From NCBI GenBank assembly GCA_021613535.1, contig CP075496.1:4836001-4900000 (forward strand): DNA of 64,000 bases. Direction: 5' to 3'. Under the pieces are notes generated by a model that saw only the letters and a program-made list of their open reading frames with translations, was not told the origin of the DNA and made no database searches. This document shows positions 14,142-21,900 of this stretch, one piece after another. Both the position numbers and the translations under genes were made by a program. The stretch's first letter is position 1. The number at the start of each line of letters is the position of its first letter. The stretch is from Adineta vaga. Taxonomy: Eukaryota; Animalia; Rotifera.

Positions 14142-17100
14142 ATGTACTGTGCATGACTGGGTGTGATGTACTAAGAGAAAGAAAAGCAGCTCATGCTGTC
14201 AAAAAAACGAAAGATAACTTGAATATGTATATATATTTGCTCGATTCATCTTAATATATGTCTTTATCTTCATTTAAACTCATTCGTTAGGGTTCAACTT
14301 ATTGGTATATCAGATATACATAGACAACGACTCACATTTTAATCGATAAAGTAAAAGAGGTTGGTCCAGATCAACCCTCTTCTAACCGATGAGAGAAGGC
14401 GATGAACGAGTCGTAATGGGAAATTGAATGAACAATCGAGTAGAGAGAGACAGAGACAGAGACAGAGAAAGGGAGAGAGAGAGAGTTAACGATCGACCGG
14501 CAATCACCAGCAGAGTACTAATGTCCTTGCTTAATGGTAATAGTATTGTCGTATTAGTTACTTTCGAAACTTATCATTGAATTGGTTCGATGCAAACGAG
14601 GCAGCATATTAGGTGGAGTGAAAAAGAACAGCACGAGAGAATGAGAAGAAGAAAAAGAAGAAGAAGAAGACGACGACGAAAAAAAGAAAGAAAGCCATGC
14701 TCGTGTTACCTATCCGCTCTTGACATACTCCTAACACTTCGCAATGCAAAGTAATAGACGCCGAAGCGAACGACAAAAACAAGCTGTGGCAAGCAACAGC
14801 AGCAGCAACAGCGGCGGCATGAATGACAATGTTGGTGGTAAATACGGCAAACGCATATATATATATATAAAAGTAAATTTACATAAGGCATACACATACA
14901 CACACACACCAAATGTCGCATAAATTGAAAAAGTAATATGTAAAGAAAGAAAAGAAATGGACCACAAACGATAACTAATAATATATATATATATATAACA
15001 AACCGTCAAGAGTTCAAGTACTATATCTCAAGATCTATTTGATACTGATGATGATGACGACAACGACGACGACCATAGAATTGACTTTTTAAAAGTACTA
15101 GTAGGAACGTGACGATGATGTAATCATTATTACTATGTTGTACATCATTAATATCGTAAATATGAATGTCTGGATGGAAAGAATATGGAATGCATACGAA
15201 CATATATACATACAGTCATCAAAATGGATGACCCCACTTTTCTCATTTTCTATACCTCCTCTCGTCTTTCTTTTTCTTCTTCTTCTTCTTCTTCGTCTTT
15301 TTTCTTGTGCTCTACTCTGACTAAAGGGATTTGATTGACAAACACACACGCATTCAAGAGAAAAAATGGGAAGAGATTGCTATGACTATATTTGGCGCGA
15401 GAAATGCATGTGTCCCTTGTGTGACAACTATCGATCTTATCTTGTGCTTTATCTCATCCATTCAAGGTGGATCTTCTACAATATATGTCAAGAGGGACAG
15501 AGAGAAAGAAAAAGGGGGAGAGAGAGAACGACGATTAAGAATTGTTGTATTAGCTTGAAAGATGCGACTAATTGATGTCATGAAAAAATGGAAGTACAAA
15601 CGAATAAAAGAAAATGAATGTTGAAATTTCGATGAGTTTTCATTTGACTTCTGTTACTACTTATATATGTGTTTTTGCACGTATTCAAAACACATTTTCA
15701 CCGGAAGACAAATGAGTTGGTAAGCGAAAGCCGAATGATGTAATAAGCAATTTATTTTTTTTTCCGAACTACTACAATCATAGATGACAGGAAAAGATAT
15801 ACATATGAATGTATGTTGCATGATAGTTAAACTCACTTGATATATTACTTTGTCTCGGAGATGAAAAAGAAAAGTCCGATCAAAATAACCTTCTGAAATA
15901 TATATCTCACTTAATGATAATAATTGATGTTTTCATTTTCTAGAAACTATCATTTGTTCTTTTTCTTTCATGTTTTAATACTAAAGATTCTTCTTTGTAT
16001 TTATCATTTACATATTTCATCAATGGTAAACATATGTGATGAACGAGAGATAATTAGTCTGATTGTAAAAAGAAGATATCAGTGACATTCTTAGCAAGTT
16101 AGTGATAGAGATCTTAAGAGATTTCCTTGCATTTCAATAATCGCAAACAGAAAAGATAATCATTGTTCTATAATAAACAACAAGTCTATATAATCAATGT
16201 AGTTTATCAATATATACATATACATATATATTTATGCAAGAGAAAAGATAATAATAATATGAAATGAGCAGAGATCATTTTTTCTTGAAGAAAATCTATA
16301 AACTATTCATCAAGTGTTTATCATTTCCTTTGTATTACTCAAGATGACAATTACTTACAAAAGTAAAACATGCAAACATGAAATCAACTTAATTTGTCCG
16401 AGTTTTTCTCCGTAGAATAATCTAAAATGAAAGAGAAAGATAGAACAAAATGTATTCCAGATTGACTTAATATCGACGACGATGATGATAATAGTGATGA
16501 CAGAATCCATACTGGCCTTGTTACAGTTATCTTGTCTTGAAAAGCGAAGAAAAGCCTGATTAGCAAGTAATCACACGTCGTCATCATTTGTTTACAAGAT
16601 AAAAAAAGACGCACGTAGGCATAAATGTACATATATTAAAAGATCTGCAACTGATCATCCTTTTTTTTTGACTTACCCGTCAGATAAAAAGAAATATAAA
16701 ATTAGACGCTCTTTAACCTTTCCTAGAATGGCAAAGAAAATGTAACAGAGATTTATACAATGACAAACTTTCTTATATACTAAGATTTCCTTCAAGCAAT
16801 TGTACAATGTGCATGTCATGAGCAAAGAGGCCAAACAAGCAAACATATGCAGGCACTTGATCTCTTATCTTGATGCATCTATATTGGCATCAATGAGTTT
16901 CACTATCTAGACGACAGTTGAAATAGAAAGATAGAGAAACTCGATGTTGTTTACAGATCGATGCACTAATTGGCATGCAAACTTATCGAACACTCATACG
17001 AGAGAGATAGTTAAATAGATGGATAGCCGATCGGATGTGATGCGACGAAGGCAGTGTTGCACAAACATACAGTTTTTTCTCTTATCGCCTAAAGGCGGGC

Positions 17101-18398
17101 ATGCATCAACATGGGAGGAACTTTTTTTTTTGACAGAATTAGATTGTCATCATACAGTGACTTATATAAATATATACATAGACAGACAGACAGATCAGGA
17201 ATGAAAGAAGAAAATCATATTTGATGAATTGAAGAAAAGACATACACTTAATGAATATAAACTTTTCGATGATCGTTAAATGTCAATGTTCGAATACTTG
17301 CCAGAGGATTGAATGAAGGTCAAGAAAGGAGAGAAAAGAGAAAAGAAAATAAGAAATATGTGACTGTAGTTTTATCAACTGTGAATTCTGTTATTCTTAG
17401 AAATTCGTTATACAGATGTAGAAGAAGAAAAATAGAAGATAATTATCTACCTCATCTCAAACTAGTCTTATCAATGACCTGAACAAAAACTTATTAATAC
17501 AATATTCTTTATTGACGAGATAATTAATTAATGCGTTCATCAATCTTATAGAATGAGCGAAGATTTCTTTAGTATCTGATTGACATTTAAATTGACTTAT
17601 CTGTTCTCCTATACAAATTACGTTAAAATATTTCCGTTTCAAGATTGCATCGGCCATCTGAAAAAGAAAACATAGTTGCAAAAACCCCGGAAATAATTAT
17701 CATTTGAAGATAACTAGAATTAGAAGCTCATAAATATTCAATTGAAATCGTACAAAGTACCGACGTAGAGTTTTTTTTCTCTGAATAAGAAAGAAAAGAA
17801 CCTCATTGTCTTCTGTCATTAAAAGAAATCTGTCTTGTGTTAATAAAAATATTGTTTATTGTCGATTTGTTGACCTTCTGATCAACTCATAATTGAGCAT
17901 GACATCGTCTTATTTATTTTTTCATGATATAATAGCTTACATATCAAGGTTACAAACGACATTTTTCCCATCACGATATGTTGAAATATGTATACATATA
18001 TACTGTTTTATTCAATGACAAAGATAAAACTTATGAAACACATTGATTTATGACATTAATTTTGATAAATGTGAAGATAGAAAAGTACTTATACATTATT
18101 ATGATAATAAAAAGAAATTTTATGTCAAATTTCTATTATTTAAAATATAAATAAACATTTCTGTTGAAAGATGGTGAATGGAATGTTCTTAGTAAAATAG
18201 CTTTTTATAACCTATGAAATTTGAATATATTGAGTGAAAGAAAGATGATTTATTTTTATTCTGAATCATTAAAGAAAAGATGAAAGTGACACATTCTTTT
18301 TTTTCTTTTCCTTCTTATTTTTATACAGGAAAAAGAATATATTAGAAATTACGAAATTTCTTTGATAAATAATGAAATTAAGTGAAGATTTATATGAG

Positions 18399-18403
18399 AA
18401 AAA
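18399..18403 (-). terminator. RNA polymerase III terminator (T5) just downstream of the tRNA
   Basis: TTTTT on the minus strand, 2 nt after the discriminator base. Confidence 0.7.
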
Positions 18404-18405
18404 CT

Positions 18406-18477
18406 TATCGGTGCCGGGATTTGAACCCGGGCCAGAGCATTTAGAGTGCTCTATCCTAACCACTAGACCACACCGAT
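18406..18477 (-). tRNA. tRNA with CUA anticodon (amber suppressor-type), Glu/Gln-like body
   Basis: Minus strand reads ATCGGTG TG GTCT AGTGGTTA GGAT A GAGCA CTCTAAA TGCTC TGGC CCGGG TTCAAAT CCCGG CACCGAT A. This gives a 7-bp acceptor stem, D arm, 5-bp anticodon stem with 7-nt loop (U33, CUA, A37), 4-nt variable loop and 5-bp T arm. A and B boxes are intact. Confidence 0.92.
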
Positions 18478-18940
18478 TTGATCAATTGACGAAAGCATAC
18501 TGTTGACAATTCAGTGAATTTCTTTGTCATCATTTTGTCACTTAACAAATTTACATACATTTGTATGTTCTGATATTGCATTTACTTCCATGCAAATAGT
18601 TTGACAAAATCAAGATTCTAGATATCAGCAGATGTATTCGATATAGTTCGAAGAAAACTGTTTGAACATTACTTCAGATTCTCAAAACATAAATTTTGTT
18701 CAAAATAATATAAATTTAATGAAAAAGAAGAAAGAAGTGTATCGTTGATTTATTCTATATATCTTACTCTCGAGTTTCTTACTGACTGAAATCTTTAAGA
18801 GATATTGTGAATAAGTCAAAAGTAGTTTTGAATTAATTTATTTGTTGATAATGTTTTTAGAAAAGCACTTTACAAAATCATTGGGAATAGAAGAAAAAAG
18901 TATCTTTTTAATGGAAATTAGTGAAAAAAGTTCTTTATAT

Positions 18941-21900
18941 TTATGTATCACTGCTTGCTGCAGTTTCACTGTAAGCAGGATTTGTTATTGGACCCAATGC
19001 TTGTGCTCCCATTAACGGTAAACTTGCTCGATCTCTAGAAAAATAATAAAGAAAATGAACAAATAAGTAATCGTTTTCTAAAGATAAAACTATTCTATAC
19101 GTACCTAGCAGCACGAATACGTGGTAGAACAAAAATATATCCTAGTACAACAAGAGCAATGGCTGCAATAGCACCGAATATTCCTCCCACAATGGCACCC
19201 ACTGAAAGTACATGCATAGATTGAATATATTTTAATAAAAGATTTCGAGTCACTTACCATTACTCTTCTTTTTCGGTGGTTCTTTATTTTCACATTGTGG
19301 ACCGGTAAAACCAGGTTTACATCTTGAAAATATATTAATCAATCAACAAAACAATCTTTTTCAAAAAACAATACACTTACTCGCACATTGGTTTGCCAAC
19401 TTCTGTTGGTGATGGTTTACAAATACCATGATTATAACAAGTGTATTGAGCACATTCTAAACGGAAGATGAATAAAGTCAATTAGCCTATGAAGATTTTG
19501 TACGAGAGAAAACAAATATTTACCACTAGGTGTTGTAGTTGTTGTAACTGTGCTTGTTGTTGATGGACCTGTATATGTAGTCGTTGTTGTTGATCCTGGT
19601 GTAGTGGTTGTTGTTGTTGTTGAAGAGCCTGTGTATGGTGTTGGTGTAGGTTTTGTTGGTATTGTTCCATTATATTTAGAACATTGTGGTGTAAACGTTA
19701 TATCATCGATTGCCATGATTGCATCACGATCAGCACCAGTTTTGACACCAATCATAATCTATTTTAGAATAAAATACAAAATAATTTATAATTATAAAAA
19801 CAGATTTCTTGTTTTTAATGTTACTTCTGTTGCACTGATTAAGACTGCACTTAATGGAACATCAATGCGTTGCCATGAACATCGTGTTGAATTCGTTGGA
19901 CATGATGTATAACTGGAGATGGCGAGAGATTTCATATCACCTCCGATTTCATATCGATAATTAACTAATAATTGTCCATTATACGAACTCTTGAAATAAA
20001 TCCAAAAACGCATTGTACATCCTTGGTCAACTGTTGGTGCTAGATAAGTTGATATAGCTGCGAATGAATCACGTGGAGTTGTTGCATTCAATCGTAATAA
20101 ATAGAAATGTCCCTTTAAAAAAAAAGCATCGAATGGATTTATCAAAAACAAAATATATTAAAAAATTTATGTTTCAACTTACAAGATGACTACGTGTTGT
20201 ATGATCGTAAGGTGGTCGTTGTTGGTATAACAATGCATTAGTACGATATCTTTCCCATATTAATTCACTACCAGATGTTGTTTCCCATGAACATGAATCT
20301 TGTTCAAAATCACATCTAATCAAAAGATAGACGAAATGCGTTTCTCTCAAACATCTATTTCATTTTCTTCTTACCGATGATAATCATAACAGACATAATC
20401 TTCTTCATCACTACCGTCGCAGCAATCTAATTCATAATCACATTTACTTGTTTGGGGCACACAGTGTCGACTTTGACACATAAATTGAGTTGAATCGCCT
20501 GCTGCACATGTTGGTGTAACGACTGGTTCTTCATAACATTGTTCAAAGCGGAAATCATCTAATGCTATATCACCAGTAAATGATGTACCACGTATACCTT
20601 CAACAATAATATTAAATTGTGATGCACATGTTGGTAAATAAGCTATTCCTTGTAACCAATCCTTTCCTTGACTTCCTTTCAATGACCATATTAATGTATC
20701 CATACCACCTGCACGTATATGAATGTTTAGTGTATCGATTGTCGCACCAAACATATGATACCTATGTAAAAGACGAAAGTCAGTTTTCAACAATATATTT
20801 TCGATATTTTCATTTTACCAGAATGTGAACATGCAAGTTTTTGATGATTTACGATACAATGGACTGATAAGACGAGCACTATCACCAGTAAAACCTGTAC
20901 TTGTTTCCAAATAGATATATGTTCCGTTGATACTATGTGTTGTATGATCTGTTTTAAAAAAAGAATATAAAAAAAAACAGTTTTGAATATTTTTTTCAAC
21001 GTTCATTGTCAAAAACAAAACTCTTACCATAACTTGGACCTGTATCAGATGATGCTGTATTACCACTACCAAAATCCCATTGAAGTTTTTGTTTCTTATC
21101 ATTTGTCCATTGACATAATGATTTTTGTTCAAAATTACATGCTAATGGGCATGCTAATTCATCCGTTTGATCTTTACAGTCAATATAGAAATTACAGAAT
21201 GCATCGTTTGGTATACATTGACTTGTAGTGGTTAGACATTGTGAATGTGTTGCATTACAAGGTGGAGTTCCTGTTACAGGAGGAACAGTTGTTGGTAGTG
21301 TTGATTGTGATTGTAATGTGCAACTTGGTGTAAAACTTATATCATCAACACCAATATCACCTATGAATAGATAGATTTGAATATAAAAAAGTTCAAGAGA
21401 AATTTTCGAATAAAAACTACCTTCATAACCTTTACCACGAACACCTTCAATCAGAACTTGAAAAGGTTGTGCAGAATTGAGTACAAGTTTACGACGTAAC
21501 CATTCATCACCTTTCTCACCGGTTTGACTCCAAAGTAGATTTAATTTACCACCAACATTAGAACGTGTATAAATATTCAATGCTCCAATGTCATAGCCAT
21601 ACATATGATACCAGAATCTAAAATGACAATTACCAGATGTTGTTGGAGCAAATACTGGACTAATAACACGTGCAGTATCATTTGGTTTACGAGGTGAACT
21701 TGTTTCCAAATATAGTAAATGACCTTTTGATGTTCCTGAAATTAAAAATAGAAATATAAATTGTTTTTATTGTTTTATTTTTTTTCAATCTTACCTAATG
21801 TATGATCACGATCGGGTCCATAGATTTGCCAAAAATCATCATACCAATTGTTATTATTAATTTGATCACCACGCACACGTTGCCAACGGAAATCAGCATC

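What the first reader, a model, noticed from the sequence alone, without database searches (positions are those of the whole stretch)
18406..18477. Intact nuclear amber-suppressor tRNA (anticodon CUA) in an animal-type genome
Seen: a 72-nt cloverleaf with fully Watson-Crick acceptor, anticodon and T stems, anticodon loop CU-CUA-AA (plus-strand tag at 18442-18444), intact Pol III A/B boxes and a T5 terminator. Known: the D arm (GTCTAGTGGTTAGGAT) and CCGGG/CCCGG T stem match eukaryotic tRNA-Glu, and the anticodon loop and TTCAAAT T loop are within one base of tRNA-Gln(CUG). The acceptor stem (A1-U72, ATCGGTG/CACCGAT) and anticodon stem (GAGCA/TGCTC) differ from canonical Glu/Gln tRNAs yet remain fully paired. 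Inference: this is a long-maintained, dedicated UAG-decoding tRNA rather than a fresh point mutant or decayed pseudogene. It may reflect an undescribed readthrough or recoding system in this lineage. The amino acid it carries is unknown.
Basis: partly seen in the sequence, partly recalled or inferred. Interest (0 to 1): 0.92.

Follow-up and report, generated by a model that had tools for sequence, protein, structure and literature searches.

The report
Conserved amber-suppressor-type tRNA in rotifers
A single, intact tRNA gene whose anticodon reads the stop codon UAG sits at the same chromosomal spot in at least 13 related rotifer-like genomes, so selection keeps it, although what it does in the cell is still untested.

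Summary
Window 18406-18477 (minus strand) is a canonical 72-nt tRNA with anticodon CUA (Rfam 67.4 bits; ARAGORN). An independent DNA run shows the same letters. It is single copy in a 100.8-Mb, six-contig genome that fits Adineta vaga.

It is not a fresh mutant, pseudogene or SINE head. I found the same gene about 2 kb downstream of the same MAM/LDLa receptor gene in at least 13 other, diverged environmental genomes. The anticodon loop never varies. The tRNA is about 93% identical across them, against 77% or less for the flanks. Two stem pairs changed on both sides and stayed paired.

Its body is glutamate-type, nearest to a minor tRNA-Glu(UUC) of this genome, not to Gln. It is not a pyrrolysine tRNA.

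No UUA or UCA partner tRNA turned up. I found no in-frame UAG, and UAG still ends the neighbouring gene in seven relatives. A genome-wide code change is therefore unlikely.

One thing is new and unexplained. In several relatives a second form of the gene carries a homologous 90-nt insert that splits the T loop and the B box.

Expression, charging and readthrough remain untested.

The parts
18406..18477 (-). tRNA gene, 72 nt including discriminator A, Glu-type body, anticodon CUA
   Evidence: ARAGORN. Rfam RF00005 at 67.4 bits. Same letters in the run X2 contig.
18442..18444 (-). anticodon CUA (TAG on the plus strand), within the loop C32 U33 C34 U35 A36 A37 A38
   Evidence: The loop is invariant in all 14 related sequences.
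18460..18470 (-). A-box-like internal promoter block (tRNA positions 8-18)
   Evidence: Read from the sequence. Identical to the genome's Glu(CUC) genes. Promoter function is inferred from the Pol III type 2 consensus.
18417..18427 (-). B-box-like block (G-G-T-T-C-A-A-A-T-C-C, T arm)
   Evidence: Read from the sequence. Invariant in 9 of 10 intact relatives. Split by the insert in L054, L060/61/64 and L129.
18399..18403 (-). T5 run, Pol III terminator-like, 3 nt after the gene
   Evidence: Relatives have T-rich runs of about 5 to 10 T at the same place, some interrupted by a C.
18502..18516 (-). upstream block about 28 to 42 nt before the gene, conserved only at this locus
   Evidence: Alignment of 14 upstream flanks. 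Not seen upstream of 50 other tRNA genes of the genome. Function unknown.
18423..18424 (.). T-loop point where relatives carry a 90-91-nt insert, and where contigs of run X1 break
   Evidence: X1 pieces cover 18368-18425 and 18423-18571.

Best explanation
This is a real nuclear tRNA gene. It arose by duplication of a minor tRNA-Glu(UUC) lineage and acquired the anticodon CUA. Purifying selection has kept it at one chromosomal position, just downstream of a giant MAM/LDLa receptor gene, across many related bdelloid-type rotifer genomes.

The most likely mechanism runs as follows (all inferred). Pol III transcribes the gene from its internal A and B boxes. A synthetase charges the tRNA, most likely GluRS because the body is Glu-type, with GlnRS as the alternative. 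The tRNA then pairs with UAG in the ribosomal A site in competition with eRF1. That would give low-level or conditional amber readthrough rather than a changed genetic code. The A36-A37-A38 loop is the context in which A37 is isopentenylated in tRNAs that read U-starting codons. It differs from every Glu tRNA of the genome at positions 36 and 38, so the loop looks fitted to UAG.

In several relatives a second form of the gene carries a 90-nt insert that splits the T loop and the B box. I read that form as a silent copy, which would limit the dose of the suppressor. This last point is the weakest part.

Shown: the gene, its anticodon, its copy number, its origin in the Glu family, and its conservation. 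Inferred: transcription, charging, decoding, and the role of the insert.
For: - Gene and structure.
- Letters confirmed in an independent run.
- Single copy.
- Synteny: relatives share both flanks at 67-77% nucleotide identity. The tRNA lies about 2 kb past the same MAM/LDLa exon in L059, L062, L065, L067, L068-70, L071 and L128.
- Conservation: mean pairwise identity is 93% for the tRNA against 77-78% for aligned flank columns, not counting many indels. In ten intact copies 58 of 72 columns are invariant, including the whole anticodon loop.
- Pairs kept through changes on both sides: 28-42 (A-U, G-C, G-U) and the first T-stem pair (C-G to U-A).
- Origin: the copy in L071 differs from the genome's minor Glu(UUC) at 10 of 72 positions. 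The window copy differs at 17 from that type, 18 from Glu(CUC), 25 from the major Glu(UUC) and 30 from Gln(CUG).
- A locus-specific upstream block is conserved.
Against: - No RNA evidence. The two RNA-guess runs cover only 18823-19000, which is the 3' end of the neighbouring mRNA.
- UAG still behaves as a terminator. The neighbouring gene ends in TAG in seven relatives that carry the tRNA, with no conserved extension beyond it.
- All 11 actin genes end in TAA.
- Apparent in-frame TAGs are intron ends.
- The 27-43 pair is mismatched in most relatives, and 31-39 is mismatched in L065 and L071.
- Covariation alone does not exceed the shuffle control.
- A36 replaces C36, so charging by GluRS is uncertain. 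C36 is a GluRS identity element in bacteria (my knowledge).
Confidence: 0.55

Rival explanations
1. It is a dedicated decoder for a small set of programmed UAG sites. Specific mRNAs would carry conserved in-frame or terminal UAG codons that this tRNA reads, much as Sec and Pyl tRNAs serve special sites. General termination at UAG would be spared by low dose or by codon context.
For: Long conservation of a single-copy gene with a fixed anticodon loop. A gene-specific conserved upstream block hints at its own regulation. A second, interrupted form is present in several species.
Against: No target was found. The MAM gene exons need no TAG readthrough. No extension is conserved after the neighbour gene's TAG. 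The search was very small.
Confidence: 0.15
2. It is a tRNA-shaped RNA or DNA element kept for a role outside decoding. Examples would be a source of small RNA fragments, a primer, a Pol III/TFIIIC-bound chromatin boundary next to the large receptor gene, or a substrate of a tRNA-dependent enzyme.
For: UAG still terminates the neighbouring gene. The position beside one gene is fixed in all relatives. The interrupted forms keep both halves intact.
Against: A boundary or fragment role does not explain why all seven anticodon-loop bases, including the A36-A37-A38 context, never vary while stem bases do. The whole cloverleaf stays canonical.
Confidence: 0.2
3. UAG is reassigned genome-wide, or is ambiguous between sense and stop, as in ciliates or Blastocrithidia.
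For: A cognate CUA tRNA with a Glu-type body resembles the tRNA-Glu(CUA) of such organisms (my knowledge).
Against: There is only one gene copy, and no UUA or UCA partner tRNA was found. About 30 kb of MAM gene exons are open in the standard code, and the TAGs that lengthen ORFs sit at intron ends. Seven orthologues of the neighbouring gene end in TAG. eRF1 could not be read.
Confidence: 0.03
4. It is a neutral relic: a dead or dying tRNA copy that looks conserved only because the species are close, or because gene conversion from Glu genes refreshes it.
For: Mismatches at 27-43 and 31-39 in some lineages. Interrupted copies exist.
Against: The flanks are full of substitutions and indels while the tRNA is 86-97% identical to the window copy. 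Conversion from Glu genes would restore a Glu anticodon, yet all 14 lineages read CUA. The nearest Glu gene differs at 10 to 19 positions.
Confidence: 0.05

Closest known systems
tRNA-Glu(CUA/UUA) of eukaryotes that read UAR as glutamate (peritrich ciliates, Blastocrithidia); my knowledge, with context papers PMC5304391 and PMC11040004 listed
   Same: A glutamate-type tRNA body with a stop-cognate CUA anticodon, encoded in the nucleus and kept by selection.
   Different: Those organisms use UAG and UAA as frequent sense codons and also have a UUA partner tRNA. Here there is one gene, no UUA partner, and UAG still ends genes. The host is an animal.
tRNA-Gln(CUA) of ciliates and other lineages with UAR=Gln (my knowledge)
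   Same: A cognate UAG reader derived from a neighbouring sense tRNA by a change at position 36.
   Different: The body here is Glu-type, 30 of 72 positions away from the genome's own tRNA-Gln(CUG).
Laboratory amber suppressors, such as yeast SUP tRNA mutants and C. elegans tRNA-Trp suppressors (my knowledge)
   Same: CUA anticodon, competition with eRF1, and a dose-dependent cost.
   Different: Those are single-base mutants of multicopy genes, identical to the parent elsewhere. This gene differs from every Glu gene at 10 or more positions, has paired stem changes, and is shared by many species.
tRNA-Pyl (ARAGORN's label for any cta anticodon)
   Same: Only the CUA anticodon.
   Different: This tRNA has a canonical 8-nt D loop with GG, two bases between the acceptor and D stems, a 5-bp anticodon stem, a 4-nt variable loop and a T-U-C T loop. 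tRNA-Pyl departs from all of these (my knowledge). I did not search for PylRS.
'Suppressor' calls by tRNAscan-SE in animal genomes, for example in the sponge Oopsacas minuta (PMC10280926)
   Same: A predicted stop-anticodon tRNA in an animal nuclear genome.
   Different: Such calls are usually listed without follow-up. Here synteny, conservation across many genomes and the parent lineage are shown.
Anticodon-shifted tRNAs, such as the nematode nev-tRNAs (my knowledge)
   Same: A tRNA body of one identity carrying another anticodon, conserved within a clade.
   Different: Those read sense codons. This one reads a stop codon.

Membership tests
Eukaryotic nuclear tRNA gene (Pol III type 2) | Canonical cloverleaf with conserved tertiary-contact bases | tested here: met
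   Rfam RF00005 at 67.4 bits, full length, no non-standard pair. ARAGORN.
Eukaryotic nuclear tRNA gene (Pol III type 2) | Internal A and B boxes and a downstream T run | tested here: met
   Read from the sequence. T5 at 18399-18403. Relatives have T-rich runs of about 5 to 10 T at the same place, some interrupted by a C. Only the match to consensus was tested.
Eukaryotic nuclear tRNA gene (Pol III type 2) | Transcribed and processed | tested here: inconclusive
   The RNA-guess runs X13 and X17 cover only 18823-19000. Contig data cannot show small RNAs.
Nonsense (amber) suppressor tRNA | Anticodon complementary to UAG in a standard 7-nt loop with U33 and a purine at position 37 | tested here: met
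   Invariant in 14 lineages.
Nonsense (amber) suppressor tRNA | Aminoacylated, and inserts an amino acid at UAG | not testable with these tools
   Needs acid-urea northern blots, reporters, ribosome profiling or mass spectrometry.
tRNA-Glu family | Glu-type D arm, 4-nt variable loop, and nearest relatives are Glu genes | tested here: met
   The D arm is identical to Glu(CUC). The copies are 10 to 19 differences from the minor Glu(UUC), against 30 to 32 from Gln.
tRNA-Glu family | Glu anticodon (YUC) | tested here: not met
   The anticodon is CUA, so this is a Glu-derived body, not a Glu decoder.
tRNA-Pyl | Atypical fold: short D loop without GG, 6-bp anticodon stem, 3-nt variable loop | tested here: not met
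   The alignment to the general tRNA model is fully canonical.
tRNA-Pyl | PylRS and pylBCD genes in the genome | not tested
Variant nuclear genetic code (UAG as a sense codon) | Frequent in-frame UAG in conserved coding sequence, and UAG not used as a stop | tested here: not met
   The MAM exons are open in the standard code and the TAGs lie at intron ends. Seven relatives end the neighbouring gene in TAG. The sample is small.
Variant nuclear genetic code (UAG as a sense codon) | Altered eRF1 stop-recognition motifs | not tested
The one stretch I read is Pelota, not eRF1.
tRNA pseudogene or tRNA-derived SINE | Many copies, decayed stems, no conservation beyond neutral | tested here: not met
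   Single copy. Intact stems. 93% identity against 77% for the flanks.
Bulge-helix-bulge tRNA intron (for the 90-nt insert of relatives) | Two 3-nt bulges 4 bp apart at the exon-intron junctions, conserved across copies | tested here: not met
   The L060 fold puts both junctions in one unbroken helix. That helix is not kept in L054 or L129.

The most novel reading that the evidence does not exclude
Bdelloid rotifers keep a dose-controlled natural amber suppressor. A dedicated Glu-derived tRNA(CUA) would give programmed or stress-dependent UAG readthrough in an animal with an otherwise standard code. Its activity would be set by two forms of the gene: one intact, and one interrupted in the T loop by a conserved 90-nt insert. 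The two forms persist side by side across species.
Probability: 0.3. Interest if true: 0.9.

Novelty: new variant of a known kind. Interest (0 to 1): 0.78.

Why it matters
To my knowledge, no conserved cognate stop-codon tRNA other than tRNA-Sec has been described in an animal nuclear genome. I found no paper in the held library that describes one in rotifers.

If this tRNA is active, an animal tolerates a permanent amber suppressor and apparently needs it. That bears on three questions:
- how stop-codon reassignment begins;
- how readthrough is regulated;
- how long-lived asexual lineages might buffer nonsense mutations.

It would also offer a natural animal suppressor tRNA scaffold for comparison with engineered ones.

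The co-occurring interrupted form is a separate puzzle that a simple PCR can address.

Tried and rejected
- **SINE or multicopy origin:** rejected. There is one copy in the genome.
- **Fresh point mutant of Glu(CUC):** rejected. The window copy differs at 18 positions, with paired stem changes.
- **Gln origin:** rejected, with 30 differences.
- **tRNA-Pyl:** rejected on structure.
- **Ochre or opal partner tRNAs:** pattern scans for UUA and UCA loops joined to a canonical T loop gave only chance hits. ARAGORN accepted none. tRNAs with long variable arms or odd T loops would be missed.
- **Second (ohnologous) copy of the locus:** none. The MAM exon matches only its own gene.
- **In-frame TAG in the longest TAG-readthrough ORFs:** these are the 3' ends of short in-frame introns.
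- **Earlier-note lead, shared in-frame TAG in two DYW genes:** 112 codons span 93 profile positions. That fits a 57-nt intron, so the lead is not supported.
- **Histone H4 C-terminus pattern:** no match, so uninformative.
- **Actin C-terminus:** 11 of 11 genes end in TAA. This says nothing specific about TAG.
- **eRF1:** the best PF03463 hit is Pelota.
- **The 90-nt insert as a repeat family:** no match in the own genome or in any held sequence. Rfam gave nothing significant. It has no GT..AG ends and no target-site duplication longer than 1 nt.
- **Naming the relatives' species:** the sources give no names.

Full report
**What is there**

The window is AT-rich (32% G+C) with short ORFs, as expected for an intron-bearing eukaryote. 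It is C4:4836001-4900000 of a 100.8-Mb genome in six contigs. That fits the six-chromosome haploid assembly of the bdelloid rotifer Adineta vaga (PMC8494291). This identification is my inference, not a tool result.

ARAGORN finds exactly one tRNA in the 64 kb, on the minus strand at 18406-18477 with anticodon cta. The Rfam tRNA model scores 67.4 bits against a gathering score of 29. The match is full length and has no non-standard pair. The gene has:
- seven, five and five Watson-Crick pairs in the acceptor, anticodon and T stems;
- a Glu-type D arm;
- the anticodon loop C-U-C-U-A-A-A;
- a 4-nt variable loop;
- A- and B-box-like blocks;
- a T5 run three bases after the gene.

A contig of an independent DNA run (X2) spans the whole gene with no difference inside it.

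**Copy number and family**

A DNA search of the whole genome returns the locus itself plus three Glu tRNA genes at 76-82% identity. A pattern for the Glu-type D arm with any anticodon gives 17 hits:
- two Glu(CUC) genes;
- ten copies of the major Glu(UUC);
- three copies of a minor Glu(UUC);
- one Gln(CUG);
- this gene.

The minor Glu(UUC) shares three features with the CUA gene: the unusual A1-U72 pair, the T arm, and the discriminator. The window copy differs at 17 positions from that minor type, 18 from Glu(CUC), 25 from the major Glu(UUC) and 30 from Gln(CUG). The copy found in relative L071 differs from the minor Glu(UUC) at only 10. The gene is therefore a derivative of a minor Glu lineage, not of Gln, and not a one-step mutant.

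**Relatives**

A scan of JGI metagenome contigs for the Glu D arm followed by C-T-C-T-A-A gave seven contigs. Six hold an intact 72-nt CUA tRNA. Their flanks align with the window on both sides at only 67-77% identity.

I then searched one exon ORF of the neighbouring gene (window 20371-20793, minus strand) by reference. It returned 32 orthologous exon products at 52-77% identity. I fetched the contigs that encode eleven of them. An intact CUA tRNA lies about 2 kb past that exon in L059, L062, L065, L067, L068-70, L071 and L128. L072 and L125 show the 5' part, including the anticodon, up to the end of the contig.

Counting near-identical contigs once, at least 13 lineages besides the window carry the gene. 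The sources give no species names.

**Constraint**

- Ten intact copies align without gaps. Of 72 columns, 58 are invariant, among them all seven loop positions.
- Mean pairwise identity is 93% for the tRNA. It is 77-78% for aligned columns of the 250-nt flanks, which also carry many indels.
- Pair 28-42 occurs as A-U, G-C and G-U. The first T-stem pair occurs as C-G and U-A.
- The 27-43 pair is mismatched in most copies, and 31-39 is mismatched in two.
- With so few changes the covariation score does not beat the shuffle control (58 of 500 shuffles reach it). The case for selection therefore rests on the contrast with the flanks and on the fixed loop, not on covariation.
- A block about 28 to 42 nt upstream is also conserved. 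It is absent upstream of 50 other tRNA genes of the genome. Its role is unknown.

**Is the code changed?**

I found nothing that says so.
- Scans for CUA, UUA and UCA loops joined to a canonical T loop find no other stop-anticodon tRNA that ARAGORN accepts.
- The neighbouring gene encodes a giant MAM/LDLa/EGF/transmembrane protein on the minus strand. Its many long exons are open in the standard code.
- The ORFs that grow when TAG is read through do so because short in-frame introns end in TAG.
- That neighbouring gene ends in TAA in the window. Its poly(A) site lies near 18823-18826, about 350 nt before the tRNA.
- In seven relatives that carry the tRNA, the homologous stop is TAG and no extension is conserved beyond it.
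- All 11 actin genes end in TAA.
- eRF1 could not be read.

UAG therefore still terminates, and any suppression must be weak, conditional or site-specific.

**The interrupted form**

In L060, L061 and L064 the gene is split after the two T's of the T loop by a 91-nt insert. These contigs are 99.9% identical to L059 over 12 kb. L054 (98% identical to L052) and L129 carry a 90-nt insert at the same point.
- The three inserts align with one or two small gaps at 58-66% identity. They are homologous and old.
- Scaffolds L062 and L063, which are nearly identical to L059, have 100 N at exactly that point. The right-hand contig of L062 restarts before an intact gene. L072 and L125 end there.
- The contigs of A. 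vaga run X1 break at 18423-18425, while run X2 reads through.
- Both forms therefore seem to coexist within samples in several species.

The insert splits the B box. It has no GT..AG ends, no target-site duplication beyond one base, and no conserved bulge-helix-bulge. It has no copy elsewhere and no Rfam match.

My preferred reading is a silent allele kept beside an active one, with flanks and exons homogenised by gene conversion. An unusual intron, or DNA removed in some cells, is not excluded. I could not fetch it.

**Mechanism**

The best-supported chain is:
1. Pol III transcribes the gene.
2. A synthetase charges the tRNA, GluRS by body type, possibly GlnRS.
3. A37 is modified in the A36-A37-A38 context.
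4. The tRNA competes with eRF1 at UAG.

Only the gene, its origin and its conservation are shown. Every step after transcription is inferred.

**Literature**

Full-text searches found no description of such a tRNA in rotifers and no conserved cognate stop-codon tRNA in animals. One sponge genome paper lists a predicted suppressor tRNA without comment.

**Verdict**

This is a real, old, selected gene of suppressor type in an animal lineage. Its activity is unproven, and it comes with an unexplained second form. Interest is high and novelty is a new variant of a known kind.

Noticed in passing
L004:1509-1580 (-), L049, L051 (own genome C5:2491762, C3:635279, C5:4282988): Three copies of a minor tRNA-Glu(UUC) with A1-U72. 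Each lies about 300 bp from an odd tRNA that has anticodon GUA but U1-A72 and a non-Tyr-looking body. ARAGORN calls that partner Tyr.
   Followed up: partly
L060:8054-8144, L054:796-885, L129:2934-3023: A homologous 90-91-nt insert splits the T loop of the CUA tRNA gene in three relatives. Intact copies exist in the same or nearly identical genomes. Other contigs end, or have N runs, exactly at that point.
   Followed up: partly
window 18826-50000 (-): A giant receptor-like gene with many MAM and LDLa repeats, an EGF-like exon and one transmembrane segment. It ends in TAA at 18941-18943, with a poly(A) site near 18823-18826. It has no second copy in the genome.
   Followed up: partly
window 15568-17427: This stretch is 72% identical over 1.9 kb to relative L053 and also matches L057, yet has no long ORF. 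It may be conserved non-coding sequence or a gene with many small exons.
   Followed up: no
own genome, e.g. C1:6450933-6451268 and C1:6467849-6468184: The genome has 69 DYW-deaminase domain matches. Two tandem copies carry one TAG inside a match that is 19 codons longer than the profile, which most likely marks an in-frame intron.
   Followed up: partly
L124 (own genome C1:6641200-6641800): The best match to the eRF1 N-domain family is a Pelota/Dom34-like gene. The eRF1 candidates lie at C2:7695137, C5:10678368 and C6:5190363. The last sits in a 473-codon open frame without introns.
   Followed up: no
L122 (own genome C4:13962798-13962827): Beside an intact tRNA-Arg(UCG) gene lies a degraded copy whose loop reads T-C-A. 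ARAGORN does not accept it as a tRNA. It shows what a decayed point-mutant suppressor looks like in this genome.
   Followed up: no
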